Source of the DNA: Podarcis filfolensis
Lineage: Eukaryota
Strand: one strand, 5' to 3'
DNA length: 64,000 nucleotides
NCBI GenBank assembly: GCA_964270895.1
Contig: OZ185440.1
A program made the translations under genes and the position numbers. Below, one piece after another: positions 1 through 33,000 of the stretch (positions are counted from its first letter, which is position 1; each line of letters starts with the position of its first letter). The notes beneath the pieces were generated by a model. That model ran no database searches. It saw only the letters and a program-made list of their open reading frames with translations, and was not told where the DNA came from.

Positions 1-442
1 CCTGTATCCAGGTTGTGTTTAGAACTTGGTTAACTTTTTTCCATTCCCTGGGAAGAAAGGAGGCTGGGACTGCAAAGATGTGTGTTTTAACTCTGAGGCT
101 GAAATACACAGTTGTCTGCTTTACCTTTTTGTGTTAAAGCTTACAAGGACAGACAAAATATCATGGTAGAAGAGGAGGCAAGGACGCTGGCCTTCTGCCA
201 TCGTAAGTCCATCTGCCAAATATGTCTATAGACCCATTATAGCTAGAAGGACTCAGCAGTTTCTTTTGCAGAAATGCTTCATTCTGGTTGCCCCCAAGGT
301 GCAACTGAAATCTCTGGCTCAACTGAGCTAATCCCTCTTCCAGAGTGCAGAGGTTTCCACATGCTAGAGGTGGAAGGTACAAATAGGCATATGAAGAACT
401 GGACCATTAAGTCAGCAATGATAATCTTCACTGATCCCACCA

Positions 443-468
443 TTTATTTATTTATTTATTTATTTATT
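443..468. repeat. (TTTA)n microsatellite
   Basis: About 6 direct TTTA copies; reads (AAAT)n on the minus strand, possibly an old retroelement tail. Confidence 0.9.
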
Positions 469-3400: not shown

Positions 3401-6084
3401 TGTCCAAACCCAGGCCCATGATTAAGCTCTCTCCTCGCTAACCATAAACTGTAGTCAAAACCAAACCATGGTTAGAGCTTGTGGTTAGTCTGGACAGAAC
3501 TTAACCACAAGCCTGAGTTTGGATGACATGCCAACTTGCTCAGTGCAGCAAGCAAATAAAAAAGATCAGGGAAGAGCAAAGTTCTCCAAGTTCCTTTTTG
3601 CAAGCCCACATGTTTGTGTGGTCCTGGTAAACCAAAAAAATAAACTGTGCCTTTCCTGCCAGCTTTCAGCAGTGTGAATAATTCAGGGCATGATTCAGTT
3701 AATGAGTTCCGTCAATGGAAGCCTGAGCAATGACTTTCGCCCGTGCAATGGAGCTTTGCCATCTCTCCTTCCTCAGTATGCCCCACACCCCTGAAATTGG
3801 CTTGGGGGTGGTCAGGAAAACCCCCAGAACAGTGAATGAGTGGAGGAGAGGGGGGAATCATTCCATATGACAAGCTGAAATGCTTGCACTGGCAAAACAA
3901 ACGACACAGTGTGATGTTGAATCCCTCTCATTGTTAAATCCCTGTGTATGTTAATTTCCCAACAACATTACATTCTAGTCAGCAGGCTTAGGTGCCTCAA
4001 ACTAGATTTGTTGTGTTTTTTGTAGAATCAAATATCTTAAGCCAGAGATAAACTGTGTCAACTTCCATCCTGACCACTTTATAGCAGACTGGGATCAATG
4101 ATGATGATGATACCACCCTATACCTGCTGGTCTCAGGACAGTTCACAGGATAAAATCAGAATATAAAACTACGTAATCAAAATAAAAACAACAACAACAA
4201 CCCAATAACACCCCCCCCAAGGATCTACCAAGTTCAAAACTGCAATGGCAGTAGTCACAATGTACCACCTGTTCACTGGGACCTCTTTCTTGCAATACCT
4301 TTTGCTCCCTCCCATCCTGCACTTTCAGCCTTAGTGATACAGCCCAAAACCAGCAATCTGTCTGGCCTTACAAAATCTTCAGGTCAAAAGGTGATAAAAG
4401 AAGAGGTTTGACCTCCCAAGGTGATTGTGGGGAGTCATGCTGTACATGAGGGTTCACTGCTTTATTGCTTTTTAAGCAATAATGATTCATGCTATACAGT
4501 AGTTGAATTATTGCAAGTTTCAAACACTAGGGTGCCACCTTATGCCAATCTAAAACATACATTTCATTTTAGTTTCCTATTGCCAGAGACGCTACATACA
4601 ATTCACCTGTTTGTGTGACAGTGAAACAGATTGTTATCTGTTGCTTTAACGGAAGAGTCTAACCAAAGGCTGCATACCTAGACAGTCTAATGCCAGGCAA
4701 CAGTACCACAAGATTCACTTTTTCCTAGGTTTTCTAGTTGCAATAAATTATATCATCCTTGTCGTGTTTGGTTTACTGTTTGAATAGACTGATTTATAAA
4801 GTAAAATATTGACTAGAAGTTTAATAACTAGAGCAGGTGAAAAATAAGCTTATTAATTTGATGTGTGGATATGAGTGTGGATGTATGTGTTTGCGTGGGG
4901 AGGATCCCTCTGTCAGTACTTTAAAATTATTGCATCAACACGAGGATCTAAGTGTGACATATAGATCTCTTATGTACACAGAGATCTCCATTTAGTTTAA
5001 TGAGATAGTGATCCATATGTGTAATAAACTATGCATATAGATTGGCACCTTCCACTGAAATGAATATGGACATTTCTCTGAATATGTGTTGGAGCAAATA
5101 AAAAATTAAGCCCCCCGCCCTTCCGCAGAATTAGAGAAAATTCTGGCAAAAGCATTCCTAAAATGGCAGTAATAATTAACTGGAGTTAGATTATGAGGAG
5201 TTAGATTATGATTTAAATTTAGTTTTTCACTGGAGATGAAAATCAGCAAAGCACTAACTTTTTGAGCCCTGGGACAATGGAGTCCATTTCTCCTTGGACT
5301 GTCTGGATTATGTCATAGTAAAATACAATCAAGGAACCTTTGATCAATTGAACAGGGTGGTGACAGGTACTCCTAATTCACTGTTGTTAGTGAATATTGA
5401 CAAACTGGTAATGATCATACTGCAGAATGTCATTCAGACCAAGAATATTAGCATTCTTTAAAGGTCAAAAGCAATAGCTTCATAGAGACAGAATTCCATA
5501 CAATTCCAGCATCAGATACTTCACATTCTACATAGAATGACCATATATTTCAGCACAAGAACCATTATTTTCAAAAAGACTGGGCATGACCCCATATTTG
5601 TGCATGAATCTGTATTTAAAGGTTGCTAAACCACTGGTTGTATAAATCATCAGTGTTACATCAAACAAATATTGCACATGCATGTACACAGGTGGTGCAA
5701 ATGCAAAGCCTATGCTATTGTGCATTAAAAGACTGACTGTTTAAAGTTTGGTTAAACATTAACGTTCTAATTTCAAAAATGTAGAAATGGGCTCTGAAAA
5801 TATTTGCAATGTGAGGCAACTGTTCTCAAACTGTGGGTCCTGACACATCGGTGAGTTCCGACTTGTTCCTAGGTGTACTGAACAATCAGCATTTGTTTCC
5901 CCTCTATTCCGAGGGCAAATGGATAAGAGCCAGCCATTTATATCTTCTTCCACTAAGCCTGTCAATTCTCGAGCACATTCTACACAGAAACCTATATGCA
6001 AAGTTATGCCAACTTTCTAGCCCTCAGGGCTCCTCGTAGTTGGACACCCAGCTCCTCTCTGCTTCAAGTCACAGTGTAGAAGTG

Positions 6085-6087
<3 letters not shown>

Positions 6088-6117
<30 letters not shown>
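6088..6117. repeat. (TG)n microsatellite
   Basis: About 15 TG units. Confidence 0.95.
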
Positions 6118-6118
<1 letters not shown>

Positions 6119-6154
6119 TAACACCTTTATTGTGCTTTATGTAAACGGCTTAGG

Positions 6155-6290
6155 CAGGCATGGCCAAACCTGGCCCTCCAGCTGTTTTGGGACTACAATT
6201 CCCATCATCCCTGACCAGTGGTCCTGTTAGCTATGGATGATGGGAGCTGTAGTCCAAAAACAGCTGGAGGGCCAAGTTTGGCCATGCCTG
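6155..6290. mobile_element. Non-autonomous hAT-type MITE (136 bp, near-palindromic)
   Basis: TIRs caggcatggccaaac / gtttggccatgcctg, extended internal palindrome, 8-bp TSD ggcttagg/agcttagg (7 of 8 match). Confidence 0.85.
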
Positions 6291-6306
6291 AGCTTAGGGA
6301 TCCTGC

Positions 6307-6307
<1 letters not shown>

Positions 6308-6350
<43 letters not shown>
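6308..6350. repeat. (TAT)n microsatellite
   Basis: About 14 TAT units. Confidence 0.95.
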
Positions 6351-6806
6351 TTGTTATAAATAAATAGCAAACAATAGTGGCACACAACAGCAATGCTGAA
6401 ACACAACAGCAGCTCCCTCCCATCAATTGGGACTACCAGGACAGAGCAACCCAATCAGTTGCAGTTTCTTCTAGAGTGCCGTTTGGTGGCCATATATGTC
6501 CTTAATCAGTGTAACATCACAAATTGTATCAGGCTAGAGTCTGCATGCATGCTTTGCTTTTCTACTACAGCAATTTGTAGGACAGCAGGTTTCAGAATGA
6601 ACAACGTCCTTTTGTAAAATCAGGACCCTATTACTATAATATGATACATCCAACCTAATTAGAAATATAGCACGATTTACTTGATGTAAAGCATGGTGAA
6701 CTGGAGAATGAATGATCAGTTTCATAAAACGTTTTGCATAGTAATCATGAGGGATGGAGGAATCAAAGAAAGAAATATGTCAAAGTAAGATATTCTAATG
6801 TAACTA

Positions 6807-6974
<168 letters not shown>

Positions 6975-7901
6975 TTAATGTGAATGAAATTGAATATTTA
7001 ATTTTCCACTTATCACTAATTGCTGTTTAGGTAGGCAGATATATGGTTAGAGTTGAGGAAAGTTAACATGACAGATTAACAGGGAGAATTGTATATATTA
7101 AAGCATCACAGCTGGAAATCTGAAACAAAAGAAGCTCATTTTAATAAACAGTTACCTCAGATGACCCTAAAGACTTAACAATTGAAATTAAAATACTGTA
7201 CCTAGGAATCAGATGGGACAGCTAAGTTCTTTAATCGTTTTAAACATTATTCTCTAAAGAAACATCTGATCAGGATTATCTACTCATTCATTCAAACAAA
7301 ACAAGATTTAAAGATGTACTCTTCTTTTCTGAGGTTACATTAGGGAAATCTTAAAATAGCAGCTGTTAAAAAATCTTGAAAATGAATGCTTTTCACATAA
7401 AAAGAAAAAAAAACTCTTTAAAATGAGCTTTTCAAAACAGAAACCAAATCTTTGCATAAGAAAGCTTTAACTCTAATCCTCTGAATTTCTTTAAGAGACA
7501 AGGCGTATGCTTGCTTGCCGGTTTCATTTGTGTAAGGGATATTTTATATCAAAATGTTATTACACTTCCCATAACAGTATTTCCCTTTTTCTATGAAAAC
7601 ATGTCTATCACCAAATGTTAATTTAATTTTCTGGGTATAATCAATTACAAAACAAGAAGCCTTCAAACTGCAAACCGGGTAACAAGGAATTCTGCTGAAC
7701 CAGATACTATAGTTCATACAGTACATATCAGGACTTCAATTAGAGGTCTGTGGCTGATAGGGCAGCCTGACCTATTGCTTTTGAAATCAGGGTCAAAGAA
7801 ATCTGAGGATAAAGGGATTATTAACAGAACTGTAAAGTTGTTCTTGTCCATAGGATAAGTGGCATACATTTTAAGGTTGTTCTAATTAAGATTACCAAGT
7901 C

Positions 7902-7903
<2 letters not shown>

Positions 7904-7941
<38 letters not shown>
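7904..7941. repeat. (AC)n microsatellite
   Basis: About 19 AC units. Confidence 0.95.
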
Positions 7942-7944
<3 letters not shown>

Positions 7945-8731
7945 TATATTATTTAATGTAATATAAAGCTTTGCTATGCCCAGACATACTAAATTCCTTC
8001 AGCTTCAGTTTCATTGATTTCATTTCCAAATTACCGAAAATACTTTTTATTTATTTAAGTTCTTGCATAATATAACTCCCCCCACAAAAAACCCATATGC
8101 ACACAATTTTATATTTATTTTGCCGGCAAGGTTTAATTGAACTCGAATGATTTATTTTGATTTATCAAAAATTAAAATTGCAGGTCCATTACTGTTAAAG
8201 TGTTTCAGTATTGATATAGCATTATTAGAAGCAGCCTTTGTACATTCTCCATTCAAGCAACACATTCAAGCTGATTTCCCAATAAATAATGTAGGGCTGG
8301 AAGCACATTTCTTCAGCCCACTGGCACCAGCAGAATCCTGAATCTGCCAGCATTATTTTCATTTCTATAACCCAGGTTTATAGCGTTTGAGCAAACAGTA
8401 AAAGCCAGGTGTTATTAGCTAACATTTCTCCTAGATAGGTACCCAGCTAACCTGAATGGCAGAGTATCAAGCTCAGAACACAAAATCAATGCAGGCTTTA
8501 CAATTGTGAACCGCATTCACAAATACATAAATTAATTCCCAGTGTAAGCCATGTGCATGCTCACAAACTCATAGGAAATGTTTGCATCCACAAGCACTAC
8601 TGAATGTAAGCCTTGCGTATATTCTCATCAATAAGGATTATAGGAAATTGTATAGAATAGCCATGGAAAGATGTGCATAATAACCAGCAATTATGCACAT
8701 TCACTATGGTCATTCTGCACATTCTCTACAG

Positions 8732-8983
8732 CAGGGGTAGGCAACCTAAGGCCCGTGGGCCGGATGCGGTCCAATTGCCTTCTCAATCCGGCCCATGGAC
8801 GGTCCGGGAATCAGCGTGTTTTTACATGAGTAGAATGTGTCCTTTTATTTAAAATGCATCTCTGGGTTATTTGTGGGGCATAGGAATTCATTCATTCTTT
8901 TTTTTTCAAAATATAGCCCAGCCCACCACATGGTCTGAGGGATGGTGGACCAGCCCACGGCTGAAAAAGGTTGCTGACCCCTG
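8732..8983. mobile_element. Non-autonomous hAT (Charlie-like) element, 252 bp
   Basis: Termini caggggtaggcaacct / aggttgctgacccctg; perfect 8-bp TSD ctctacag at 8724-8731 and 8984-8991. Confidence 0.9.
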
Positions 8984-9148
8984 CTCTACAGTTTAGCTAT
9001 TTAGAGTAAAAGGTATAGTGTGCTGTCCTTTTAATGAAGACACTCAAAGCTGCTAACAAAACATACAAAACAAGATAAGAAGAAGCCAATCATTAAAAAC
9101 AGGTTCATACATAAAAACCACAGCAGCTGAAAACAGCATTAAAATGCA

Positions 9149-9150
<2 letters not shown>

Positions 9151-9220
<70 letters not shown>
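9151..9220. repeat. Compound (CA)15(GA)20 microsatellite
   Basis: Direct reading. Confidence 0.97.
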
Positions 9221-9223
<3 letters not shown>

Positions 9224-9749
9224 TGACTTGATGAATAAACTCTTACAAAATGAGACTTTTAGTATTTGTTGCACAAGTTGTAAATACTGCTTTTCTGTAC
9301 TGCAAAGTAATGCCAGCATTGAAAATCCTTGCCATGTAGAGTATCTTACTATACAGAGACATCTTAAAATCTTAAAATAGTAGTGATCAATTAGAACTTA
9401 AAGCCTATTATCTTAACCAAATGCCTGATTAGAAAGAAAAGCCTTCCCTACTCTAACTGCAACTTGATTCCTCTTGGTTTTATCCCCTACCTAGATAATC
9501 CTCTGTTTCACAAACAATGTCAAGCAAGTAACTTCTAATAATACTTACAAAATAGGTGTCCATGATACTTATTACAGGGGCACCTGAAAAAGTTGCTGAA
9601 AAGATTTCTGATCTATCAAGCAGTACACCTACTAACTTAAGTATTAGCCATATGTTCTGATGTGACAGTGAAGCTGGAAAAGATTTGAAATGCAATGAAA
9701 TGATTAAATTTGGATAATGATGTATGAAGTACATGTCTGGTGTCTTTCA

Positions 9750-11310
9750 GATTATACATTGTAAACTATCAATGGAAGGGGATACATTCTGGGACTTTAT
9801 GCTGATGATGTTGCTTTATGTACACAGACCCAGTTGATGCTGGAAGGTTACTGAGTATAGAATCGGATACCTTTTTCAATGTCTCTGGACAAAAATGGGA
9901 AGTATTGTTATTTCATACTTCCCCACAATTTTCCAAAATATTACAAATCCCAATAACTAAGAAATGCTCCAGATACTGCAACTAAACTAACGCTTGTTTC
10001 AAAATTATTATTTTTATTTCAGATGGTACCAGTTTGGATCCCACCTGCCCATATGTTCCAGTGGGGAAGAAAACTTAACAAACTCATATTTCAGACAGAC
10101 AGACAGACCACGCATTTAAAAATATTTGCTGTACCTTCACCGAACTGTTGGAGGATGGGAACTCCAAAATCTAAACAGCTATTACAATGCATGTCAACTC
10201 AGCAACATGACAGACCTAATGTCTGGCAACAAAGAAACTCAATGGAACATTTGAAAACTTAGAAATAAATGGTGTTCCTCTAAAAGTAATACCTTTAAAA
10301 AAAATAAATTCCTCTCTTTGCACTGGCTTACAAATCTGTTCACACTTACAACTTTGAAAATTTGGACAAAATAGGCGAAGGTTCTGGTTTCAGGCCTCTC
10401 ACCTATTATTTCATTACAATTCCACTCTGTTTTCAAAAATAAATATAGTGTCTATACTACAGATATATGGAAATAAAAATAATGTTTTTATTGGAATTTA
10501 TTTTTACAAAGATGAACGACTGCTTATCTTTAATAAGATGCAATTTAAATTGGAAAATATTGAAATATCATGGCTATTAGGCTACCAATTAAGGTCGTTT
10601 TTCACATATTCCCAGATTAAAAATGAAGCCACAAGACAATTAATGACATATGAAGAAATAATAGTCAAAGAAAATATAATAGCAAACATATTATCATCAT
10701 CTTTGTATAAATATATTACAGAGATTGAGTTTTGTCCTCAGCAAAATTTGAGAAGGTTGTAGGAACTGAATTAAGATTTAGAAGTTGAAATAGAGGCATG
10801 GAACAGAAAGTGGACAAAAGTGCCATAAAAATCCATTTTAGCAACAATGAAAGGAAGAGCCCTAAACCAGAGAAAGAACCCTAGACGCCTAGCCTATATA
10901 AAACTGGACAGTTCTCCTATGTGTTGTAGAGGATCTCCCACTATAAGGACATATCAGCACATGTGGTGGGAGTGTCCAAAAACAGAAAAGTTCTGGGAAA
11001 ACGTATTTACAGAAATATAGATTATAAGACAGGCAGTCCTCATGATCCCAGGAATGGCTATACTTAACTCGCATGTTGCAAATTAGAAACGAAGAACTTA
11101 TAACATAGCTATTAACTGCCGCAAGAACTATTATTAACTATTGACCAATGGGTATAACGCAATTTGCAAAACAACATTATTGGAAAAACTGACATAAAAA
11201 TTAAAAGTAGCAAGAGGTTAAAAGAAACATGACAATTTTCATGCAATCTGGTGTGACTTTATTGACTACACACTTAATGAGGCATATGGTAGAACAGTAC
11301 CCCTAGTTTA
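9750..11310 (+). mobile_element. Decayed L1/Tx1-type LINE ORF2 (RT to C-terminus)
   Basis: LYADD RT motif at 9795-9809; zinc-knuckle-like CCRG...QHMWWECPKTEKFWENVF from 10922; many stops and frameshifts. Boundaries approximate. Antisense to NFIA. Confidence 0.8.
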
Positions 11311-13362
11311 CACTTCTGGTATAGGTACAAAGAAGTTCTAGGCAGTCTCCAATGCAGGCATTGAACAGATCCCAACATATTTAAGTTTCCTCAAAGGTGA
11401 AGTGAAATAAGTCACTATCTGCACTAGAAACAGAACTGTCAGATGTTCCTGAAGTCACCAGAATTGTAATTCACTGTATTTAAATTGAATTTGCGGCAGG
11501 CTAGAAAAGATTTCAACTGTCTTTATGCTTAATAAAAGGTGAAAGCTGTGAAAGCGACGCATCCCTCTGTGGAATTCCGACTATTCACTCACATGCTCCT
11601 ATGTGATGGTGACAATCAGCATGCTGTGAATTATATTCTTCCCATGCCAGTCTATTTAAAAGTTTCACAGTTTGATCAATGCATATTTGCAGTGTGTGCT
11701 TGTGTGTGTTTAATAAAGACATTTAAGTATGGACTTATTGTCCAAATATCTCAGCGTTAAAATAAAGTTAGATGAAATGAAGGCTTTAAAAATAACGGGC
11801 CAATTGCTATTCCAAAGAAATCACTTTAGCTGTACTGCATGGGTTTCCCCTCTATTGCTCTTGCTACCATCATTTGCTGACAGTTGCTTTTCATATCAGT
11901 TCAGCATCACACGAATAACTAACGGCCACTTCGTTAGCCATTCAAATGAAGCATTTCCTTCCAAATAACCACTAAGCTACTGGGTTCACATGCCCATATT
12001 ATCCAAAGCTTGCTTGCACATATGGCTTTAGAAAAGTTTTTAAGAACCACCAGCACATTCTTTGAGGCATATAGCAGGAAAAAAATTAGACTATCTGGGA
12101 TAAATCATGTTAGCACAATGGATGGACACCTTAAAGACTTTAAAGTCATGTAATACAATCCTAGGCTGGATCTTTCTTGTTGAAAAAGGCAGAATACAAG
12201 TGGCCGAGAGAAAAAAGAGCCAATATTTGACAACACAAATCAGCATAACCTTTTAACTGCAGCAGTCATGGATGACTGCCCTTTGACCTGGAGAGATTAT
12301 GTGGGATTTCAATGACAACAGCTGGAAGTGAGCATGTGTGAATAGAGAACAGAAGATCTTAGGCCTAACACAAAAGCCTGTCCAGATCAGAGCATTGATT
12401 AGAAATTGTTTCCTGGTCCCAGTTTAATAGAGTGTAATAATGAAAGTTTTGTTAACTCTTCATAGCATGCACAAAATTAGTTGGAACTTGTTCTTTGTAG
12501 TCTTCTCAAAAATTTCACAGATTCATCTCGTAAGAGAGATCATTTCAGAATAATTGCAAATGGGGATAATTGCCTAAGAATTCTTTGGACTGCACATTGA
12601 AATAAGAGCAACATCATGTAAAAGATAATAATCTTGGCTTCAAAGGACACTGTCAAATTCTACACCTGGAATAAATATAAATAAAGCTAAAATGAAATAC
12701 TCTTATTTATCCCTGTTTTGTCTCTTACAATGCATGATAACATGGAATAATAGAAAATTACCACTGAACCAAAACTTTCTATCTAGGGTACTAAACTTAT
12801 TTCACAACATTCAAATGAGAGATTCTTAAGTGGGTCATGTGGAACTTGTTAACATGAGTAGTCATAATATTTACAATAATTATTGGAACAATATGACGCA
12901 TAATCCTAAGAAGAAGGATTGCAGCAGGGCGACATCAGGCTAGTTCTCAAAGGGGGAGAAACCTGTGGTGAGCTGTACTTCTTGATACTGCACGTGAAAG
13001 CTCAGATGTATATATAAAACTAGATGTCAAATAAAAGATTTCTAATGTAGCCTTCTCCCGAACAGCTAGTTTTCCATGTGCAGGAATTCTATTTTGTATT
13101 GAGAAGAACTCCACCATATAAATCCTCATCTGCTGTTGCAAGTGGCATAGCCCAATTGGTTTGCCATCTCACTGAGTTGGCTGCTACAGATGTGAGAGAG
13201 AAGGGGCAAGGAGGAGTTTAATATGGCAGTTCAATATAAGCTGGCTTATAGTGAGTTAAACCACTGGTAGGTACATCTAGTAAAGTAGTACTCTCCAACA
13301 TTTCAGGCAATGGTCTCTACTAGGTGCTACCTGACATGCCTTAATTGAAGATAGTAGAGATG

Positions 13363-13720
13363 CCTGAAGGAGTGTCTCCACGCCCATTGTTCAGCCCAGA
13401 CACTGAGGTCCAGTGCCAAGGGCCTTCTGGCAGTTCCCTCACTGTGAGAAGTGAGGTTACAGGGAACCAGGCATAGGGCCTTCTCGGTAGTGGCACCCGT
13501 CCTGTGGAACGCCCTCCCATCAGATGTCAAGAAAATAAACAACTATCTGACTTTTAGAAGACACCTGAAGGCAGCCCTGTAACGGATTTTTTTTTTTAAA
13601 TGTTTGATGCTTTATTGTGTTTTTAATATTCTGTTGTAAGCCACCCAGAGTGGTTGGGGCAACCCAGTCAGATGGGTGGCATACAAAAAGAAGAAGAAGA
13701 GGAGGAGGAGGAGGAGGAGA
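13363..13720 (+). mobile_element. L2-clade LINE 3' fragment with (GAA)/(GGA) tail
   Basis: Encodes ...RAFSVVAPVLWNALPSDVKKINNYLTFRRHLKAAL, a typical L2 ORF2 C-terminus, followed by a 3' UTR; closely similar to the copy at 37840. Confidence 0.85.
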
Positions 13721-14480
13721 CCATCTTAATGCAGAGACACAGTCTACTACTGAGCTCTGGTCTCCCACAACAGGGTAAGGATTTGCTACATTTTGAGTTG
13801 TGAGCAATACTTCTGACAGCCTTAGATCACTGCTGGTGGCCTGACCCACCCAAGGGTGATCCCAACATGGCTGAAACCTGGACCTCCCAATTCGTTTGGA
13901 CTTTGGCGGAATCTGGCACATAGCACTAGTCAATGCAGATGCCCACACTATAAGTCAGGGTTTCTTTTTTGTTCAATCTATCTAATATCAAGGTATATGA
14001 TTAAAGCTAGAGCCTTAAAATGTTAAAATAATGACACAAAAGTTAAGTAAGCTAATGCTATGTTAAAAGTCGACCAATATTTTTGTGAAATAAAAATTAA
14101 TAACCTTTTTGTTAGAAAAATCAACATCATAGTAATTGTTTGGACAAACACATCTCTGAAAACAACAGATGTCTTCGCATTTTTTATAGCTTTTTCATAT
14201 TTCCAATGCAAAAAGGAAATGTTAAAAGGGGAAACATAATTATAAATAGACATATTCATTTTGTAGATTAGTTTACCACACATTCCTCAAAACCCTTTCA
14301 AAGCAAACGAGATGGAATCTATAGAAAGTTAATCATTTTGGAATATGTATGGCCTCTGAAAAGACTGTAATAAAAAGAAAAGCCACCTTTAGAAAATAAT
14401 AAAAAGGAGTTGTTTATCTTCTTCTTCCTATCACTACTGCCATAATTTCTTTTACTGATCGCAACAAACAACATAACTGT

Positions 14481-14518
14481 AATCTCAGGAATTGCTTAAA
14501 ATCTCAGGAATTGCTTAA
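14481..14518. repeat. 19-bp tandem duplication (aatctcaggaattgcttaa)x2
   Basis: Two perfect copies followed by decayed aattcag...cttaa units up to about 14541. Confidence 0.9.
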
Positions 14519-16560
14519 AATTCAGTGACTTAAAATTCAGGTTTAGAGCTCAGTGATCAAGTCAATAAATAAATGAACAGCAAGTTAACATTAGGAGTGC
14601 AGACAATACTGACTGCTCAGTAATGGAACTGATTCCACAGGATGCTGGATATAGGCTTAGGGCCTTTCCACACTTTGGTCTCATTTGGATACAAAGCTGA
14701 ACTACTGTTATGTGAATGAGCATGTACCAGCCGAGGAGTCATGTGCTGCTCCATTCCTCTCTTCTTCTTCAGAATGTTCATTTCCATTTTTAACTAATCA
14801 CAATTTAGTGTTATATCTGAAGCCGAATAAACTGTGATGATTCTTAATTACAGTTTACCTTGGCTTACGAAAGTTGCTTGTTTCAATAAACCATAGTTAA
14901 GCTTAACCACAGTGTAGGGTTTGGTCATAACACCAAAATTTCAATACTAAACTTTGGTTAATTGAAAATGGAAATGAAAGTTTCTGATTTCCCCCAGGGA
15001 CATCTCAACTTAAAGATTTCTCAGGCTTGTTTTTGAAACACTAAACTAGGACAGTATGTCCTAGTTCTCTCAAGGGTTTATCTGTATGATATACCTGTTT
15101 TCAAATACATGTTGTCTCCTTCACACATTATGTATATATATAAAGTTTAAAAACAACCAAAGCAAACTGGACCTGCAAATATGTTTCAATGGCTTAATAA
15201 GAGTGCTCATATGTTTTTAACTTGGCTAGATATTGCAAACATTAATCTGCTTCAATGTTCCCTGTTTATAATTCTGATTTTGACAAATGTGAATTTTTGG
15301 ACTGATCTTAATCATCAGCAATGTTATGTCCAGAAAGTTCCCAATTGCAAAGCTCTGTGTGTGTGTGTTGGATAGATAATGTACAGTAACTAGAACAACT
15401 CTCATTAAGCTAAATCTTGTTAGCTTACTCAGTATGTGTAACTGTTACTTCTAAAGCTTATAAAACCGCAAGAAGGAATGGGTGGCTCGCTCATTCCTTA
15501 TTTTGCTCAAAGAAACATAAATTTAAAGTCATTTTAATTTTTTGCAGTATTTACATATTCAAACCAATCAAGAGCTGAAATAATCACATTTGTTTCAGCG
15601 CCTTGTTTATTGCTGCCCAGCCCCTCCCTCCTTTAAATCTTTCCCTTAGCCAGAATGATGTTTATTGAATACCTGTCATTTCTGCAGCGGCTTGTGCCAA
15701 GAGCAGCTTACCAATGCCAGTCTTACTGAAACCCCTTCTGTTTCATATTCTCTAAGGGGCTTCCTTAGATCAGCTGCTCCCCATACCCAATACACAGAGA
15801 CCTATAAATTTGCAAGCGCTGCAGTCAGCGTCCTTAACAGCAAGTGGCACCCATTTTGCCCAGTGTGGCATACTCTTGAAGGGACAGAAGAGATGCCACA
15901 TGGTGAGCAGCATTCCTCACCATGTGTAAACTGTCAATTTGATTTGAAATTAAAATTTTTGATTAACACGAGTGTTTCTGAGCCTCCCACTGGCAGCAGC
16001 CTAGTTACTGAAAAGCGACATGATTTGTGACATGCATGCTGTACAGAAAGCCCCATGCCAGGAACTGAAAGACCAGTTTTCATTTTGTTTAAATATTGAC
16101 ACTAGGGTGGTGTGTTTTTTTTTAAGGGGGTGGGATAGAAATGAACTTTGTATTTTGGACAACACCAAACAGGATGTCGATACTGAGTGGTATCCTGTTG
16201 CTTTTTAAAAGTGCCCCATGAGTATTAAAGGATGAGAACTCTGTGCGTGGTTGTATTTGTGGGGTCTACACTTTCAAATGTCATGTCTTCTCAGCATCAG
16301 GGCCTCTTCCACTGGGTGAAGGAAAATAAGGTATTAAAAACATGTTAGCTTGATAAATATTTCACACATGACAAGAAATGCTAGGCAACCCAGCCCCAGG
16401 GGCTGTGATGAGCTACACAGGTACCCTTTTAATCTAATCTGTTCACGAACACCTACCGGCAACTTGTAGGAAGCCAATGAGATGCAGCCTCCAAATGGTC
16501 TATTTCAGACAAATCCTTATGTGAATTAAATTAACAGAATTACATAAAAATTAAGAAAGT

Positions 16561-16751
16561 CAGTGTGCTATAGTGATTCAGAGTGTCAAAGAGGAGAGGA
16601 GAGGCATGGGCTCAAATCCCTACTCATCAATGAAGATTACTGTACCAGCCAGTTTCATCTACTTCATAGGGTTGTTGTGAGGATTAAAATGGGTGGACAC
16701 GCTGCTTTAAGCTCCTTGGAAGACAGATGTGGTATAAATGCAAACAATCAA
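16561..16751 (+). mobile_element. Decayed tRNA-derived squamate SINE (Squam3-like)
   Basis: Box A-like tgctatagtgattc, box B-like gggctcaaatccc (16608-16620), body cttcatagggttgttgtgaggattaaaatg, L2-type tail ...ggtataaatgcaaacaatcaa. Family name from recall. Confidence 0.7.
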
Positions 16752-16793
16752 GTACTCAATCAAATATTCCAAAGCACCTACTTTGTCCCAATA

Positions 16794-17011
16794 CAGTGGT
16801 ACCTCTGGTTACGTACTTAATTCGTTCCGGAGGTCCGTTCTTAACCTGAAACTGTTCTTAACCTGAAGCACCACTTTGGCTAATGGGGCCTCCTGCTGCT
16901 GCCACCACGTGATTTCTGTTCTCATCCTGAAGCAAAGTTCTTACCCCGAGGTACTATTTCTGGGTTAGCAGAGTCTGTAACCTGAAGCGTATGTAACCCG
17001 AGGTACCACTG
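16794..17011 (+). mobile_element. Tc1/mariner-type MITE, copy A (strand = arbitrary reference orientation)
   Basis: TIR cagtggtacctc/gaggtaccactg, TA target duplication on both sides, subterminal taacc(t/c)ga repeats. Confidence 0.92.
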
Positions 17012-17212
17012 TATCTTGTGCTGAAAATTGGGCACCTAATTACAGCCCTATTTGACATCTATCAGCAAGCTATATTGTATCATTTCCTAGGGCTTAGCTG
17101 TTCCAAAATGCTAGTCTTTCTGGCAGGAATACTTCATTAAGGAAAATGGTTCTCTGATTCAATCTGTCATAGTTTGTAGAAAGTGAAAAGAACATTTCAC
17201 TTGGGCCCAATT

Positions 17213-17338
17213 CAGGGGTGGCTAGCATACGGTCCTCTAGATATGGTTAAAAAACTACAATTCCCATCCTCTCTGGCTGGGGCTGATGGGAGTTGAAGTC
17301 CAACAATGTTTGTAGGGTCACAGGTTGCCTCATCCCTG
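17213..17338. mobile_element. Decayed hAT-type MITE related to the 6155 element
   Basis: cagggg...ccctg ends and internal actacaattcccatc...gatgggagttgaagt palindrome; TSD not recoverable. Confidence 0.6.
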
Positions 17339-17814
17339 ACAGAGCTCACAAGTTTAGATAATAATACAAGTAGTTCAAGCATTTTGGAATAATGGCATCA
17401 CAGCAAGGGACCCACAGAGCCAGGAAAAATACATTTAAAGAAGCTTTAATTTGATTTTTAAACATTAAAGAAAAGACCCAGGAGAGCTTCAAAAATCTCT
17501 TGGGGCAGCTGCAACCCAGAGGCTGCAGGTTAGCCACCCTGTTTATACGCCCTTCTGAAAATATCTACACATGGACTGGCATTGGAGAGGAAGGAATGAC
17601 AACTCAGTCTGCTCTCTCTAAATGGCACCCCATGTTTAGCCCAAAGGCAGTGTTTAAAGGAGGGAGGTCTTAAAAAGCCAGTGTTGGTGTTTATTATTGC
17701 TTCGCAATGCTCACACCTTATTGAGCACCAGTTCTCCTCACAAAGGAGGAAAAGAGGGGGAAACCTTTCCTATTACGGCTTGCTTGTGTTCATCATGCTA
17801 ATTTGAATGCTTAC

Positions 17815-17840
17815 CTTTATTCCTGGCACACAGTTTTAAC
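17815..17840 (-). other. Candidate 26-nt cassette (poison) microexon of NFIA
   Basis: catgacttttacaaccttttatgtcttag|GTTAAAACTGTGTGCCAGGAATAAAG|gtaagc: branch-like motif, pyrimidine tract, TAG/G acceptor, AAG/GTAAGC donor. No transcript evidence available. Confidence 0.45.
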
Positions 17841-19139
17841 CTAAGACATAAAAGGTTGTAAAAGTCATGTACTGTACTGCCAGGCTACCCTTGTGTTCCT
17901 GTCCATCATCCTGTTCAGACACGGAAAGGGCTAATGATCTGTCAGCTAGGTAAATTCATTACCCAGGAGAGAATAGCGCGCTGCTGCTTTTGCCCATTCA
18001 CAGCAAGGATTTCTTTCGGCATGATGCTGCATCTTCCAAGTCTCACGGGAACAGTTTATGGTTGGCAGAATAGCACTAATAACAACAATTTACATTTATG
18101 TGGTTCAGGGCATGCTCTATATTTCTACTCCTAGATCGTTCATACTCCCACTGGCAGATTCATCAGTCAGCATAGAGGAGATGCTGCCCTCCTACTCTCA
18201 GGACCAGGTTTCGCCTAGTTTTTCTTTAATGAAAATGGGTCAAGAAAGCTACAATTTGAAAGGAAGGGAAAAGGGGGGAGTGGAAATAGAGCAGTGATAA
18301 CCAGCTGATGCCTTGAAGAAAATAATCTTTCGAGAGCCAATTCCAATGAAACATTTTCTTCTATTCGTGGACGGATGAATTTTAAACAAGCTGGGTTGTG
18401 TCCAAAAGGTTCCCTAACTTTGACTCACTATGTCAGAGAAAAAAACCCTATCACTGCCAGGAGGGAACCTTTGAAGCCAGCTCATTATTTGCTGATTTGA
18501 TTTATTGTGTGACCCACCTCAAAGACTTGGGATGGATAAAAGAAAAGTTAAAACGTATAAAACACAAAATGTGATGTAACCCTTCTACTACCTTGCCTTA
18601 GGTTACAAAAAGTCAACTGAAATAAATAAATGAGTACTTAAGTTCCAATTTCCAAAGTTAGATTCTGGCTGTTTCCTGGTAGAGATCATTTGAGAAGCAG
18701 CTAATAAGGCCTCTTTATGCATATTTGCAGTCCTTACATAATATTTGTAAGAGGGCATTTTCACTTGATGTGGTTTTTATGGATTGTGATGGAACATAAA
18801 ATTGGAAACACTGGTTCACTTTCATATGCCACTTCATATGCCATAAACAGCATCCTGAAATATGTTGGAAGGTGGACCTGCATGAATTTTGCAGCAGTGG
18901 TCTGTAAGTATTTTCTGAAATTCCTGTTCTGCTGCTGCTTTCAGATTTTTGAGGCAAAATCCACAATCTTTTGAATTTTGATGTCTGCTGAGATCTGAAG
19001 GGGAAACTGGCTGTACTGGTATTCAGGAGTCCTATGGCGGGTGTCTCCTCTGCCGACTTAAACAAGTGCGGAAAACTTTTCTGTTCTGCCAGCCCTTCAC
19101 AGGCAGTTAAGATTACATCCCCCCCACAATGGTCTATTG

Positions 19140-25197: not shown

Positions 25198-26190
25198 ATT
25201 TTTCTTTTCTTTTTCTTTTTTTAAATATATTTATTGAAATTTTACAAAAACATAGGTTTACAGAATCCCCCCCCCCAAAAAAACATAGGAAAAGAAAAAG
25301 ATAAAAAAAGAAAACATACAAAAATACATAAAAAAGCAAAAATAAAAATAAAAATACAAAATACAAAAAACAGATAGATAAAAAAGAATTAAAAACAAAT
25401 CCATTTTTTGTAACTTTAAACTCATAAGCTTGTTTCCTTGACCTCCTCACACCTCCCCTTTTTGTATTCCCATTTAAATAATCAAATCAGCAAATCCTTA
25501 CCCTCTTTCATTTATCTTAACTCTATATCTTAACATATTATAACTCTATATTTTCATCCATTATCAATTCATTTTTGCATATTCTCATTAACTTTGTTGC
25601 TAATGCCACTTATTTTCAATCCAACATCATTTTTAACATTAATTAATTTTACAGTGTTTCTGCAGATAGTCTTTAAATTTCTTCCAATCTTCTTCCACCA
25701 ACTCTTCTCCCAGGTCTCGGATTCTGCCAGTCATTTCCGCTAATTCCATATAGTCCATCACCTTCATCTGCCACTCTTCCAGGGTGGGTAAATCTTGTGT
25801 CTTCCAATACTTTGCAATGAGTATTCTTGCTGCTGTTGTTGCATACATGAAGAAAGTTCTATCCTTCTTTGGCACCAATTGGCCGACAATGCCCAGGAGA
25901 AAGGCCTCTGGTTTCTTCAGGAAGGTATATTTAAATACCTTTTTCATTTCATTATAGATCATCTCCCAGAAAGCCTTAATCTTTGGGCACGTCCACCAAA
26001 GGTGAAAGAATGTACCTTCATTTTCTTTACATTTCCAACATTTGTTATCGGGCAAATGATATATTTTTGCAAGCTTGACTGGTGTCATGTACCACCTGTA
26101 TATCATTTTCATAATATTCTCTCTTAAGGCATTACATGCCGTAAATTTCATACCGGTGGTCCACAATACAGCCATAATGTCTTTGATGTC
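25198..26190 (-). mobile_element. Young 5'-truncated L1-type LINE (ORF2 C-terminus, 3' UTR, polyA tail)
   Basis: Uninterrupted ORF (25639-26217) with CWKC-x7-HLWWTC zinc knuckle and AARILIAKYWK motif; AATAAA at 25230-25235 followed by an A-rich tail. 5' boundary and TSD uncertain. Same strand as NFIA. Confidence 0.93.
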
Positions 26191-27858
26191 CAATAGATTT
26201 TTTTTTTTTACCACCATTCAGCCAAAGTTTAACACATTTAAAGTCCCATTGCTTCTAATGGGAAAGTTTGAAGTGCCCTCTTACTGATTTAAACCTGCTT
26301 AAATCTCATGCATGCACATCCCTATCTAAATAAATAAATAAGTGGGTGGATGAATTCTTAGGCCACCTTTATAAATTCAATACTATTATCACAAGGGTTA
26401 ACAAACTACGGTAGTTCCGTGAGTAGCTGCATGCCATTATTTAGCACTTTTTACTGTTAGGAAGAACAAGGTGCCTTTCCTTTACTGAGGTACAGTTAAG
26501 GTATTGCAACTCAAAGCACAAAGAAAGCACTGGAATTACAATTAGTATCAATTTAGATGCTAAATACCTTTTTTTGGGAGGGAATCTAAAATCTCTACAT
26601 TTATTTAATGAGCAATTAATTCAGTAAACATTGGCGCACAGCTGCACTAATGTATACTGTCCTGTTTGCATTTACATATAAAAGCAGCCAATTCCTTGGA
26701 AAAAAACCCCAACTTTTAAATTTACGGTTAAAACTTGTTCTATCAATTTCTGTCTGTCAAATGACAGTTATGCATGATGCGTAAGAGCTTTGCTGGACTT
26801 GAACTCCTGTCATGTTCTATTTCACTATCCCAGCACTAATCTTTGCACAGTTCTATAAATACCATCTCCCTCCTCCTTCAAGAGGGCTTGACTTCTTTTC
26901 AAAATGCTGAAGTTTGAAAGGCATACCATGTCCCCATACACATTCTAATAAATTTGATGTAGTTTGATGGGGGGAAATTATGAATCGTCAAGTTTATCTT
27001 ATTCTTTTTTAAAAAAGACAATGTTAACAAAATGTTTAGACAAAAGCATGCAATGGCATGAATTCACCATGGAGGAAAAAGAGTTCTGAAAAGAGAGGGG
27101 CCCAGGAAGCAGGATGACACAGATCTATCAAGGCTGAACACGGGTTAAAGAATGTCTCCTGATACATTTTCATTGCTGTCTTCTACTTTTGTTTGTTTAT
27201 GCTTTTTAATCTAAAAGAAGTAATAGGAAATCAGGATTTCAAACAACTTCTTTTTGCTTTTTTTTTTTTAAACGACTCGAGCTCCTGCGTTGTGTCTGAG
27301 TCCTTGCATGAGAAAAACAATTTCCACTTGTGCAGTGGAACATTCCATTCCTTCCCCTTGCTTCCCAATATGTTCTTCAGAACAGATTTAGGAGGTGTTT
27401 GGGAGGGGGACACATACTGGGAGAAGAGGGAGGGGGTTTCCAATGCACTAGTGGGATTCATTCCGCTTGCACAAGGACTTCCTGGGATTCAATCCTCTTC
27501 GACTTGAAATGGCACCCAGCTCTTCAAATATCGCATGTATTTTGCTGCTGCTTTTACTCTCCTGTGGCACATTCAAGGAATAGCTGGTGCAGTTTGCATC
27601 TTACTGATTTGTGTTGCAGAAGCTGCTCACCCACAATATTCCATACATAATGAGGAATGCTGAACCTGTTCTTAATGAAGATCTAAAGCAAATCTGCTGA
27701 CTGGGAAAGGCTATGTTCAAAATGGCACATGCTTAAGTCTCAGTGAGGAAAGTAACAAAGTATCATCACCCACCTGACTTCCCCCCAAATCAATTGAGCT
27801 GCTCAAGTGCTTAAGTCAGTGGGTTTTGTGTGTGTTCATGTTCAACACTCGAACAGTA

Positions 27859-28150: not shown

Positions 28151-28216
28151 CATTTTCTGGCTGGTCCTTGATATCAGCTTCACTTGGCTGGCTTGGACTT
28201 TCAGACTGACTTGAAT
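28151..28216 (-). CDS. NFIA: Nuclear factor I A, coding exon 3 (66 nt, phase 1-1)
   Basis: Minus strand atttttatgttttttag|ATTCAAGTCAGTCTGAAAGT...CAGCCAGAAAATG|gtaagt; translates (D)[21 protein letters not shown](G), the NFIA segment just after the DNA-binding domain; phase-compatible with exon 4. Confidence 0.97.
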
Positions 28217-30007: not shown

Positions 30008-33000
30008 TAGAGTAAAATAGACAAGCCCGTATCAACTAAGAAACTATAGCTAATTTAAGTACATGAAACGATGTGTATATTTACAATTGTACATCTAAAC
30101 ATCTAAAATAAGTTTCATTCAAATGCATTTTTTCAATGTGTGTTCAGTTCAACCAAACTGTTAGTGACATAGTGGATTTCAGAATTAGTGGCTTTATTAC
30201 CAAACATTAACAAGTAATTTTTCCTTGATTTTTGTAAAAGAAACGAAAATGATTAAAAAATAAACAACTCATTTAGCACTGTGCCAAATTTCAGTGTTGT
30301 GAGATAGTATTATTATACTGTCATTTAAGATGAAATGGCTTGCACGTTAAAATTCTAATTCTGTAATCCTATGCACTCCTATTTAGGAATAACTCACATG
30401 CAACCTACATCTGAGTAAATGTGTTTATGACTGGGCTGCAGGAGTTGCTAACTATTTGTATGCTGGTTACAGATAGGTAGCCGTGTTGGTCTGCCATAGT
30501 CAAAACAAAAAAAATTTTTTTTCTTCCAGTAGCACCTTAAAGACCAACTAAGTTAGTTCTTGGTATGAGCTTTCGTGTGCATGCATTTTCGTGTGTGTAT
30601 TTGTATGCTATTCTTTTAAAGGGTATTCATGCTATTGGGTCGCACTGTTTTGCTCTGTTTTTAAATTTATATATAATTGTATACCACTTTTGCCATGGAA
30701 GGCTTAGAGGACACACTAGTCAGGAAACAAGACAAGAACCTTATCTTTTTTCTTAAACAAGAACAGAACAGCAACATGTTATAAGGTTGCAATAACATGG
30801 TTTGTTTTTTTCTGACTACAGCATCATCATGCTTTTTCAGATCTACAAACGTATTTATTTTCTCAATTGTCCTGATATCTGGGACCAATGGTTCATACTA
30901 CAATACTTCCTATTAATGCATTCCTCCATCCTTTCCAGCTTCATTTCCATTTTGGGGGGAGAAGGGTATGGAGATTCTGCATGCTGTCCATATGATTCAT
31001 GCTTTGGTGTCAGGTATTAAAACAAAGTCCACAGGATCAATGTCCCAAACATTCTTTCTGTTTCTCCAACTCTCCATAGTGCCATTTTGACAACTACTGC
31101 ATGATTTAGGAGATTATCCAGGTTATGGCTTCTGAGCTCTTTGATGGAAGCCAGTCCTCCCATAAACTACATTTCTCTTGTGGATGAAATGGGCATCAAA
31201 ACTGGTCAGAACAGTCTCATAGTTGTGTTTAAGGCCTACTTCAGCAAAGATGAAAGATTTGTAAGCATTGCAGAGTTTTGTGGGTGACATGGTATTTCTA
31301 TTCAAATCAAACCATTACAGGATTATTAAAGGGAATGTGTCTGCTGCAGAAAATGGTGCTAATTTTCTTTGTCAGAAATTGGTGCATTTAAAACTTGACC
31401 TCCCATACCATGGCATGGAGCACTTAGAGGAAACAGCTAGGAGGCTAGACAATATTTATTGCCCCCCAAAACAAAAACAGCAGCATCAAGACACACCTAA
31501 CTATACTGGAGTTCAGTGCCTTCTAGGGTCTAAAATATATAATACTGATTGACATGTACAATTACAATAATATTAGAATGAAGTATTATATATAAACAAG
31601 TAATGTAAAAGGATATTATGATATTATGTTGCAAACAAGGAATATAAAACTATACTATGTCGTTCTTGGATTTGAAATACAATAAAGCTTGGATGTCACA
31701 AATTTATCCCATATTTTATACTTTTTCTGACCTTGTATTTTTCATCCAGGCTATCTTTAAATTTATTCTGTTTTTGAAAAGACCCTTCAGTCTTTTCGGC
31801 TACCATCAGGATTAAACATGGGAACTATGGCTCTGAAGAAAGCAAACTACCAAAATGTTTCAAAACAAAATATAATTCTGTTTCCTTGATTTTTATTCAG
31901 ATACTGAAGATGATTTGACACAGTCAAGAGTTTCAGTGTTTGGTTATTAAAGAGGAAATTCACAGAGCAGTCCTAAAAATGCAAAGTACACAGCAGAGGG
32001 TTTTCATTTGGTTCACACACCACAGCCCTATTCAATAGTATGCTGACTGTAACTTCCCTATTTTGGATTGCTAAAAAGATAACTCAAAATCCTGCTTTTA
32101 CAGTATATTACACACTTTGTGTTCTGATGCACACAAAACATATCCAGTGAAATCAATGTGCACAGTAGATAACCTATTTAATTTATGTAAATGAAAGAAA
32201 TTTTCATCCACATTTGAATTAAATTAATATTACTTAATATTATTACTTAATATAAATTCAGGTTAGCCATTCATTTATTTTTTTCTCCCTCCACACACAC
32301 ACTCATATACACAAACACACAGAGGTAGAGTTATATTCCACCACCTACATAAATTAAGAATCATGCAAAAATGCATAACCATATACATACTAAATTGGTG
32401 TTCCCCTCAAAGCAGGTTTTATTGCTGTTAGGGCAGGTAAGATAAATAATTATAAAATTATTATGAAAACAGGGCAGTTCTGATCCAACTAAACATAATA
32501 ATTTTAAAATCTCATTAACGTCAATGGAAGAAAGTTAAATATATACATAACTCTGCCGCTGAAATCAATGGGATTTAAAAGCAGATTGTGCCTGGTATTA
32601 TTAAAGTGAGACTTTAATTTATTACAGATGGAGATAGAGCCATTATAGTGAAGTAAATTATTAGTCACACACATCCAGTAATCTGGTTTGAGGAAACGTT
32701 TGCTGGTGGATTCCAACAAATCATAAACATCACAGTATTGGAAGGTGAAAAAAGCCTATAGATAAGCTTTTCTGGGGCTGTATAAGCTAGTTATATGGTG
32801 CTGCTCCCAAGGAATTATACTGTGGAGTCTCTAAGTGGACTTTCTCTTCTCCATTCTCCTTTCCATTGTCAATGGTGGCAGCGACAGAGGGATCTTGGGA
32901 TGCATTGCAAGGGGAGAGTTTTGGACAATGAGAGGGAATTGGGTTGGCAATGGCTTGGGAGGGGTTAGTAGGTAGGCTGGGATGGTGAAGGAGAAGGGGC

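What the first reader, a model, noticed from the sequence alone, without database searches (positions are those of the whole stretch)
17680..18060. Candidate 26-nt poison microexon in NFIA intron 3
Seen: on the NFIA strand, a branch-like catgac (A at 17865, 23 nt upstream of the AG), a 29-nt AG-free pyrimidine-rich tract, TAG|G acceptor, 26-nt exon 17815-17840, AAG|GTAAGC donor, and a GCATG (RBFOX core) at +17 to +21 downstream, all within a repeat-free block. Exon 3 ends in phase 1 (AAT G), so inclusion reads GGT TAA, a stop at the second codon. Established: a stop followed by many downstream junctions triggers NMD; poison exons tune the dosage of regulators; NFIA is haploinsufficient; DNA-binding-domain-only NFI isoforms such as NFI-B3 act as repressors. 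Inference: a regulated unproductive-splicing switch controlling NFIA dose, or producing a truncated ...QPENG* protein. Caveat: consensus donors occur by chance dozens of times per strand in 64 kb.
Basis: partly seen in the sequence, partly recalled or inferred. Interest (0 to 1): 0.7.

Follow-up and report, generated by a model that had tools for sequence, protein, structure and literature searches.

The report
Splice-like motifs in conserved NFIA intron block
The 26-letter "hidden exon" signals are really present in this lizard NFIA intron and sit inside a stretch kept almost unchanged in distant relatives. I found no RNA evidence that it is ever spliced in, so it is more likely a conserved regulatory DNA element than a proven dose-control exon.

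Summary
**Observation confirmed.** NFIA lies on the minus strand, with exon 3 at 28216..28151 (ends in phase 1) and exon 4 at 6895..6821. Inclusion of 17840..17815 would read G|GT TAA.

**Motifs alone are not beyond chance.**
- The donor is among the 5 best of 3639 GT on the sense strand.
- The acceptor is mediocre (rank 212 of 4225).
- Equally good pairs occur about 2 (up to 30 nt) to 9 (up to 300 nt) times on that strand.

**New result: conservation.**
- Contigs of other organisms show a conserved non-coding element at 17796-18153.
- Its core, 17796-17944, has 2 differences in 149 nt in organism C, against at least 22 in the next 209 nt. The rest of the laid 2 kb does not align at 80%.
- The core holds the exon, its AG and GT, and a better acceptor at 17910. 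That acceptor gives a 96-nt exon, which also stops at once.

- The GCATG is not conserved.
- A hairpin buries the 26-nt acceptor.
- The only contig from an RNA library runs unspliced through both acceptors and the donor.
- No paper in the searched library links NFIA to a poison exon.

**Verdict.** Most likely an intronic regulatory element with an incidental pseudo-exon (about 0.5). A conserved poison exon remains possible (about 0.2).

The parts
28151..28216 (-). NFIA exon 3 (66 nt). It encodes (D)[21 protein letters not shown] plus the first base of Gly, and ends in phase 1. Donor is ATG|GTAAGT.
6821..6895 (-). NFIA exon 4 (75 nt). It encodes (G)[24 protein letters not shown]. Acceptor is tttgtAG|GA and donor is AAA|GTAAGT.
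17815..17840 (-). Acceptor is cttAG|G and donor is AAG|GTAAGC. After exon 3 it would read G|GT TAA.
   Evidence: Donor is in the top 5 of 3639 GT and acceptor ranks 212 of 4225 AG. AG, GT, length and TAA are kept in organisms C and D.
17815..17910 (-). Alternative 96-nt version using the same donor and the acceptor gtctgaacAG|GATGA. After exon 3 it would read G|GA TGA.
   Evidence: Acceptor ranks 47 of 4225. It lies wholly inside the conserved core.
17796..17944 (.). Core of a conserved non-coding element. Organism C has 2 differences in 149 nt and organism D has 3 in 144 nt. The four core differences the table places (two each in C and D) are TG>CA dinucleotide changes on the NFIA strand; D's third difference was not placed.
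   Evidence: tables 3 and 8. Fisher test of core against shoulder gives p = 4e-4. Stops or very short ORFs in all six frames.
17945..18153 (.). Less conserved shoulder of the same element. Organism C has at least 22 differences and 2 indels in 209 nt, about 88% identity. Beyond it nothing aligns at 80%.
17822..17884 (-). Predicted RNA hairpin of 22 pairs, -23.4 kcal/mol. It pairs the acceptor AG (17842-17841), the branch-like A (17865) and exon bases 17840-17822.
   Evidence: z = -3.2; 1 of 200 shuffles folds as well. Organism D's change at 17832-17831 breaks two pairs without compensation.
17794..17798 (-). GCATG at +17 to +21 from the donor. It is present here and in the close relative B, but not in organisms C and D.
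   Evidence: (loose end of X5 at 17796; the X3 alignment ends at the same base)
17816..17821 (-). AATAAA hexamer overlapping the donor (AATAAAG|GTAAGC).
   Evidence: There are 87 AATAAA on this strand, so chance presence in a 150-nt block is about 18%.

Best explanation
The candidate exon is a pseudo-exon. Its splice-like motifs lie at the downstream edge of a conserved non-coding element of about 360 nt (17796-18153, core 17796-17944) in the 21-kb intron 3 of NFIA.

The element most likely acts as DNA, as an intronic cis-regulatory module (enhancer) of the kind that crowds the introns of developmental transcription-factor genes. Its sequence is kept for that reason. On this reading the strong donor and the two acceptors inside it are incidental and are normally not used.

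Shown: the motifs, the gene model, the conservation, the lack of coding capacity, and the unspliced contig. Inferred: the enhancer function itself. It rests on base rates for conserved intronic blocks in such genes, which I take from general knowledge and did not test.
For: - Conservation covers the whole block, not the splice signals. Organism C has 2 of 149 positions changed in the core against at least 22 of 209 next to it.
- X3 holds 1.64 Gb of contigs with high-copy repeats, so it looks like whole-genome DNA. Even so, apart from shared repeats and a few short low-depth pieces, nothing else in the 2-kb stretch aligns at 80%.
- Most of the element (17841-18153) lies upstream of the exon. 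Only 18 nt after the donor are kept.
- The GCATG is not kept.
- The only contig from an RNA library is colinear through both acceptors and the donor.
- The motif pair alone is within chance.
- There is no coding frame and no Rfam family.
- No paper in the searched library links NFIA with a poison exon or an NMD cassette exon.
Against: - One of the five best sense-strand donor matches in 64 kb falls inside a 358-nt element. By chance that is about 3%.
- A good acceptor (rank 47 of 4225) lies 96 nt upstream, inside the most conserved core.
- AG, GT and exon length are kept in both distant organisms.
- No enhancer assay, chromatin data or motif test was possible here.
- Only two distant organisms were seen. 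Their distance is unknown because names are coded.
Confidence: 0.5

Rival explanations
1. A conserved poison cassette exon of 96 nt (17910..17815) or 26 nt (17840..17815). When included after exon 3 it places a stop at the second codon (G|GA TGA or G|GT TAA), upstream of exon 4 and later junctions. The mRNA would then be degraded by NMD, lowering the NFIA dose. The hairpin over the 26-nt acceptor could set which acceptor is used, or how often.
For: - The donor AAG|GTAAGC is in the top 5 of 3639 GT. Acceptor 17910 ranks 47 of 4225, and acceptor 17840 is about as good as the real exon 3 acceptor (ranks 212 and 196).
- Both versions lie in the near-invariant core, with AG, GT, length and stop kept in organisms C and D.
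- The core's upstream limit (17944) lies about 34 nt before acceptor 17910, next to a CTGAC branch-like motif.
- Ultraconserved poison exons are an established class (Lareau et al. 2007, cited in PMC8162057).
Against: - There is no junction evidence. The one contig from an RNA library is unspliced.
- Conservation stops 18 nt after the donor and the GCATG is lost in C and D.
- AG dinucleotides (17940-39, 17932-31) lie between the CTGAC and acceptor 17910.
- Known conserved poison exons are concentrated in RNA-binding protein genes (general knowledge).
- No literature mention for NFIA.
Confidence: 0.2
2. A composite alternative terminal exon. Splicing from exon 3 to 17910 or 17840 is followed by cleavage and polyadenylation directed by the AATAAA at 17821-17816. 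This would give a DNA-binding-domain-only ...QPENG* protein, analogous to NFI-B3. The overlapping strong 5' splice site would bind U1 snRNP and normally silence this poly(A) signal.
For: - AATAAA overlaps the donor inside the conserved core.
- NFI-B3 is recorded as a repressor made by alternative RNA processing (Liu, Bernard and Apt 1997, listed in PMC6138789).
Against: - AATAAA occurs 87 times on this strand, so about 18% chance in 150 nt.
- There is no clear U/GU-rich element within 30 nt downstream.
- The sequence downstream of +18 is not conserved.
- The X5 contig runs at least 44 nt past the hexamer without ending.
Confidence: 0.07
3. An RNA-level intron element that is not an included exon. 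It could be a splicing decoy or a U1-binding site that slows or guides removal of the 21-kb intron, or a structured RNA built on the 17884-17822 hairpin.
For: - Hairpin z = -3.2.
- A strong U1-type site in a conserved block.
- Human NFIA transcripts are reported as poorly spliced, with strong intronic signal (PMC10251645).
Against: - Organism D breaks two hairpin pairs without compensation.
- No Rfam match.
- 22 pairs is too short for a canonical microRNA precursor (general knowledge).
- The 161-nt block as a whole folds no better than shuffles (z = -0.9 and +0.5).
Confidence: 0.08
4. No function at all: a chance pseudo-exon in a patch that happens to have changed little.
For: The motif pair is within chance. 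Only two distant organisms were compared.
Against: The contrast of 1.3% against at least 11% differences over adjoining stretches has p = 4e-4. The four placed core differences (two each in C and D) are TG>CA changes, as expected from decay of a CpG, a hypermutable site (inference). Two organisms show the same core independently.
Confidence: 0.1

Closest known systems
Conserved non-coding elements (intronic developmental enhancers) in transcription-factor genes
   Same: It is a few hundred bases long, single-copy and non-coding. It sits deep in a long intron of a developmental regulator and is far better conserved than its surroundings.
   Different: No enhancer activity, chromatin mark or bound factor is known for it. 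It carries an unusually good sense-strand 5' splice site match.
Highly conserved poison exons (unproductive splicing coupled to NMD, as in SR protein genes; Lareau et al. 2007)
   Same: It has a cassette-like AG...GT unit with an immediate in-frame stop, inside a near-invariant block, in a dosage-sensitive regulator gene.
   Different: No inclusion has been seen. Conservation is not centred on the exon and ends 18 nt after the donor. The gene is a transcription factor, not a splicing factor.
Neuronal microexons (3-27 nt, SRRM4- and RBFOX-dependent)
   Same: The length is 26 nt, the donor is strong and the upstream intron is conserved.
   Different: The length is not a multiple of three. There is no UGC between the pyrimidine tract and the AG. 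The GCATG is not conserved. The acceptor is buried in a hairpin.
NFI-B3, the DNA-binding-domain-only NFIB isoform made by alternative RNA processing
   Same: The predicted product ...QPENG* would be a DNA-binding-domain-only NFI protein, and an AATAAA lies in the unit.
   Different: It is a different gene, and no transcript evidence exists here. The details of how NFI-B3 is processed come from memory of Liu et al. 1997, which I could cite but not read.
Vertebrate recursive-splice sites with RS-exons (Sibley et al. 2015, from memory)
   Same: The 26-nt acceptor reads AG|GT (TAG|GTTAAA) and is followed by a strong 5' splice site.
   Different: The 5' site rebuilt after joining exon 3 (ATG|GTTAAA) is weak, so the unit would be retained rather than removed. 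The intron is only 21 kb.

Membership tests
Poison (NMD-coupled) cassette exon | Bounded by a usable 3' and 5' splice site on the gene's strand | tested here: met
   Met at motif level only. Donor is in the top 5 of 3639. Acceptors rank 212 (26 nt) and 47 (96 nt) of 4225.
Poison (NMD-coupled) cassette exon | Inclusion puts a stop codon upstream of a later exon junction | tested here: met
   G|GT TAA or G|GA TGA after the phase-1 end of exon 3, with exon 4 following.
Poison (NMD-coupled) cassette exon | Inclusion seen in RNA (junction reads) | tested here: inconclusive
   Only one contig from an RNA library covers the place and it is unspliced. No RNA run of the species itself was served.
Poison (NMD-coupled) cassette exon | Included isoform rises when NMD is blocked | not testable with these tools
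   Needs cycloheximide or UPF1/SMG1 knock-down RNA-seq.
Poison (NMD-coupled) cassette exon | Splice sites and exon length conserved in orthologous introns | tested here: met
   Kept in organisms C and D, but so is every neighbouring base of the core.
Neuronal microexon | Length 3-27 nt, usually a multiple of three | tested here: not met
   The length of 26 nt is in range, but it shifts the frame.
Neuronal microexon | UGC motif just upstream of the acceptor AG (SRRM4 response; from general knowledge) | tested here: not met
   There is no TGC in 17864-17843.
RBFOX-activated exon | Conserved (U)GCAUG in the downstream intron | tested here: not met
   It is present here and in close relative B. 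Alignments of C and D end at 17796 inside the motif, and D reads GCACT.
Conserved non-coding element / enhancer | Conservation well above that of neighbouring sequence, without coding capacity | tested here: met
Conserved non-coding element / enhancer | Enhancer activity or open, marked chromatin | not testable with these tools
   No chromatin or reporter data are available.
MicroRNA or other described structured RNA | Match to a curated family, or a hairpin kept by compensatory change | tested here: not met
   Rfam gives no match at gathering scores. Organism D's change breaks two pairs.
Recursive splice site with RS-exon | AG|GT whose rebuilt 5' site can compete with the RS-exon donor, in a very long intron | tested here: not met
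   The rebuilt site is ATG|GTTAAA, against AAG|GTAAGC downstream. The intron is 21 kb.

The most novel reading that the evidence does not exclude
NFIA intron 3 carries a deeply conserved poison exon (96 or 26 nt, with a shared strong donor). Its inclusion stops translation right after the DNA-binding domain and so tunes the dose of a haploinsufficient gliogenic transcription factor. A local hairpin would choose between the two acceptors.
Probability: 0.2. Interest if true: 0.65.

Novelty: new member of a known kind. Interest (0 to 1): 0.35.

Why it matters
NFIA dose matters. A conserved unproductive-splicing switch in such a gene would offer a handle for raising its output by blocking the exon.

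As the evidence stands, the block is one more conserved intronic element in a gene full of them, and its exon-like look is unproven. That hints, weakly, that it is not near-identical in human.

The useful outcome is a precise, cheap test. Three primer pairs or one deep RNA-seq data set would decide between an enhancer and a poison exon.

Tried and rejected
- **Rfam.** A scan of the whole window at gathering scores found nothing.
- **Metagenome contigs.** Two exact 24-mer scans with pieces of the core, the donor region and the hairpin arm, found 0 hits. This says little, because those collections hold little vertebrate DNA.
- **Literature.**
  - NFIA with 'poison exon' gave 0 papers and NFIA with 'nonsense-mediated decay' plus 'cassette exon' gave 0.
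  - The four NFIA with 'microexon' hits were judged from titles and abstracts only and not opened; none concerns NFIA splicing.
  - NFIA with 'cryptic exon' led to two mouse Nfia events after TDP-43 loss. By their coordinates, and from my memory of the mouse gene, these lie in the 3' part and not in this intron.
  - NFIA with 'unproductive splicing' led only to a zebrafish paper that reports nfia alternative splicing without detail.
- **MicroRNA idea.** Rejected because the hairpin is short, has no covariation and has no Rfam match.
- **Coding-exon idea.** Rejected because there are stops in all frames, and the open 28-codon frame is not the frame set by exon 3.
- **Other NFIA exons in the window.** None found by short peptide motifs.
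- **Pfam scan of the LINE-like ORF.** No hit.
- **Not attempted.**
  - A search for annotated truncated ...QPENG* proteins, because the DNA-binding-domain exon is outside the window and I would have had to type it from memory.
  - A protein search with the short spurious ORFs of the block, judged too long a shot for its cost.

Full report
**Gene model**

Six-frame motif searches and direct reading place NFIA on the minus strand of the window.
- Exon 3 is 28216..28151 (66 nt). It follows the acceptor ttttAG|AT and ends CCA GAA AAT G|gtaagt, so one base of the next codon is carried over.
- Exon 4 is 6895..6821 (75 nt). It starts GA CAT TTG GGC and encodes [24 protein letters not shown].
- Intron 3 is therefore about 21.3 kb, and the finding lies near its middle.
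- No other NFIA exon was found in the window by short peptide motifs.
- Notes from other agents of this scan call the genome a lizard's. I did not test that.

**The observation**

- The branch-like A is at 17865.
- 17871-17843 is free of AG.
- The acceptor is cttAG|G, with AG at 17842-17841.
- The unit is 26 nt, 17840..17815.
- The donor is AAG|GTAAGC.
- GCATG is at 17798-17794.

After the phase-1 end of exon 3 the reading is G|GT TAA. I read this across the junction by eye.

**Is it more than chance?**

I used a rough weight matrix, with frequencies recalled from published vertebrate consensus tables, so the scores are approximate.
- The donor is one of only 5 sense-strand GT of 3639 that score this high.
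- The acceptor is ordinary, ranking 212 of 4225. The genuine exon 3 acceptor scores about the same, at rank 196. This shows how little such a matrix discriminates.
- Acceptor-donor pairs at least this good occur 2 times on the sense strand and once on the antisense strand for units up to 30 nt. For units up to 300 nt they occur 9 and 2 times.
- AGGTAAG occurs 4 times in the window, fewer than the 9.0 expected from shuffles.
- GCATG occurs about once per 800 nt per strand.

The motif set alone is thus what 64 kb gives by chance once or twice.

**A second candidate unit**

The same donor can pair with a better acceptor, gtctgaacAG|GATGA at 17910, which ranks 47 of 4225. That gives a 96-nt unit. 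After exon 3 it reads G|GA TGA, again an immediate stop. Any exon hypothesis must consider both versions.

**Conservation, the new evidence**

The run search found no RNA run of the source species. It did find contigs from several other, coded organisms. I laid four runs on 16900-18900 at 80% likeness.

- **Organisms A and B** are close relatives, at 97-99% identity. Their runs are low-coverage DNA, judged by the enormous depth on repeats.
- **Organism C (run X3).**
  - The run holds 1.64 Gb of contigs and shows high-copy repeats, so I take it to be whole-genome DNA.
  - It gives one single-copy-depth contig of 622 nt, of which only 17796-18153 aligns.
  - There are 2 differences in 17796-17944 (149 nt). 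There are at least 22 differences and 2 indels in 17945-18153 (209 nt). A Fisher test gives p = 4e-4.
  - Apart from shared repeats and a few short low-depth pieces, nothing else of the 2 kb aligns at 80%.
- **Organism D (run X5).** It gives a 170-nt contig matching 17939..17796 with 3 differences, followed by 26 unlike letters.

The four core differences that the table places, two each in C and D, are TG>CA on the NFIA strand, at 17848-47 in C and 17832-31 in D; D's third difference was not placed. That is what decay of an ancestral CpG would give (inference).

So 17796-18153 is a conserved non-coding element with a near-invariant 149-nt core. It is single-copy in the window. All six frames have stops or only very short ORFs. 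The core contains the 26-nt unit, the 96-nt unit, both acceptors, the donor and 18 nt beyond it.

**What speaks against a regulated microexon**

- The conservation is of the whole block, and most of it lies upstream. It ends 18 nt after the donor.
- The alignments of C and D both end at 17796, inside the GCATG, and D reads GCACT there. The RBFOX core is therefore specific to this lineage and its close relative B.
- A hairpin (17884-17822, 22 pairs, -23.4 kcal/mol, z = -3.2) pairs the acceptor AG, the branch-like A and most of the 26-nt unit. This would hinder use of that acceptor. The hairpin has no covariation support, because D's change breaks two pairs. The 161-nt block as a whole folds no better than shuffles.
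- There is no UGC near the acceptor, and the length is not a multiple of three.
- X5 is the only run on record as RNA (metatranscriptomic). Its contig is colinear with the genome through 17910, 17840 and 17814, so it is unspliced. It may be pre-mRNA or contaminating DNA. Human NFIA is reported to give strong intronic signal (PMC10251645).

**Literature**

No paper in the searchable library mentions NFIA together with 'poison exon', or with 'nonsense-mediated decay' plus 'cassette exon'. The two mouse Nfia splicing events listed after TDP-43 loss lie, by their coordinates and my memory of the mouse gene, in the 3' part of the gene. The NFI-B3 precedent exists as a citation, but I could not read the paper.

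**Weighing the explanations**

- A motif-picked pseudo-exon has a low prior of being a real exon, a few percent.
- Landing in a strongly conserved core, which covers only a few percent of such introns, raises that roughly tenfold.
- Conversely, a conserved intronic block in a developmental transcription-factor gene is usually an enhancer. The chance that such a block carries a top-5 donor is about 3%.

Both routes give roughly one in five for a genuine conserved poison exon. My estimates are:

| Explanation | Confidence |
|---|---|
| Conserved cis-regulatory DNA element with an incidental pseudo-exon | about 0.5 |
| Poison exon (96 or 26 nt) | about 0.2 |
| Composite terminal exon using the AATAAA that overlaps the donor (17821-17816; about 18% chance presence) | about 0.07 |
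| RNA-level intron element or decoy | about 0.08 |
| No function | about 0.1 |

**Limits**

- Only two distant organisms were seen. Their names are coded, so the depth of conservation is unknown.
- Two metagenome scans with core 24-mers found nothing, which is uninformative.
That is a weak hint against near-identity with human.
- The N run at 54248-54387 was left untouched.

Noticed in passing
window 16900-17033 and 17235-17368: These are high-copy repeats. Contig depth is in the tens of thousands in the low-coverage DNA runs of two close relatives, and the second repeat is also present in many copies in the distant organism C. They look like SINE-type elements shared across these lizards.
   Followed up: partly
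window 25639-26217 (-): A 192-aa ORF with a Cys/His-rich stretch (…DNKCWKC…FFHLWWTCPK…). From memory it resembles the C-terminal end of a LINE ORF2. It has no Pfam hit.
   Followed up: partly
window 17795/17796: The alignments of organisms C and D both break at the same base. D's following 26 letters look like the orthologous sequence with an insertion of about 9 nt. This indel or divergence point is what creates the GCATG in this lineage.
   Followed up: partly
window 962-991 (-), 37750-37756 (-), 32416-32441 (+): Other splice-like sites of similar quality: a 30-nt sense-strand acceptor-donor pair at 991-962 (donor CAG|GTGAGC), a 21-nt antisense-strand pair starting at 32416 whose donor is the AGGTAAG at 32435-32441, and a lone sense-strand AGGTAAG at 37750-37756 that is not paired with a qualifying acceptor. 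They serve as in-window examples of what chance gives.
   Followed up: no
window 38406-38460 (+): A CAC/CAT microsatellite that reads as a run of histidines in an ORF list entry.
   Followed up: no
window 54248-54387: A run of 140 N, which is an assembly gap or masked stretch. It was left as is.
   Followed up: no
whole window: AGGTAAG is under-represented, with 4 found against 9.0 ± 3.1 in shuffles, and every one of 100 shuffles had at least 4. This may reflect selection against strong cryptic donors in this long-intron gene, or just local composition.
   Followed up: no
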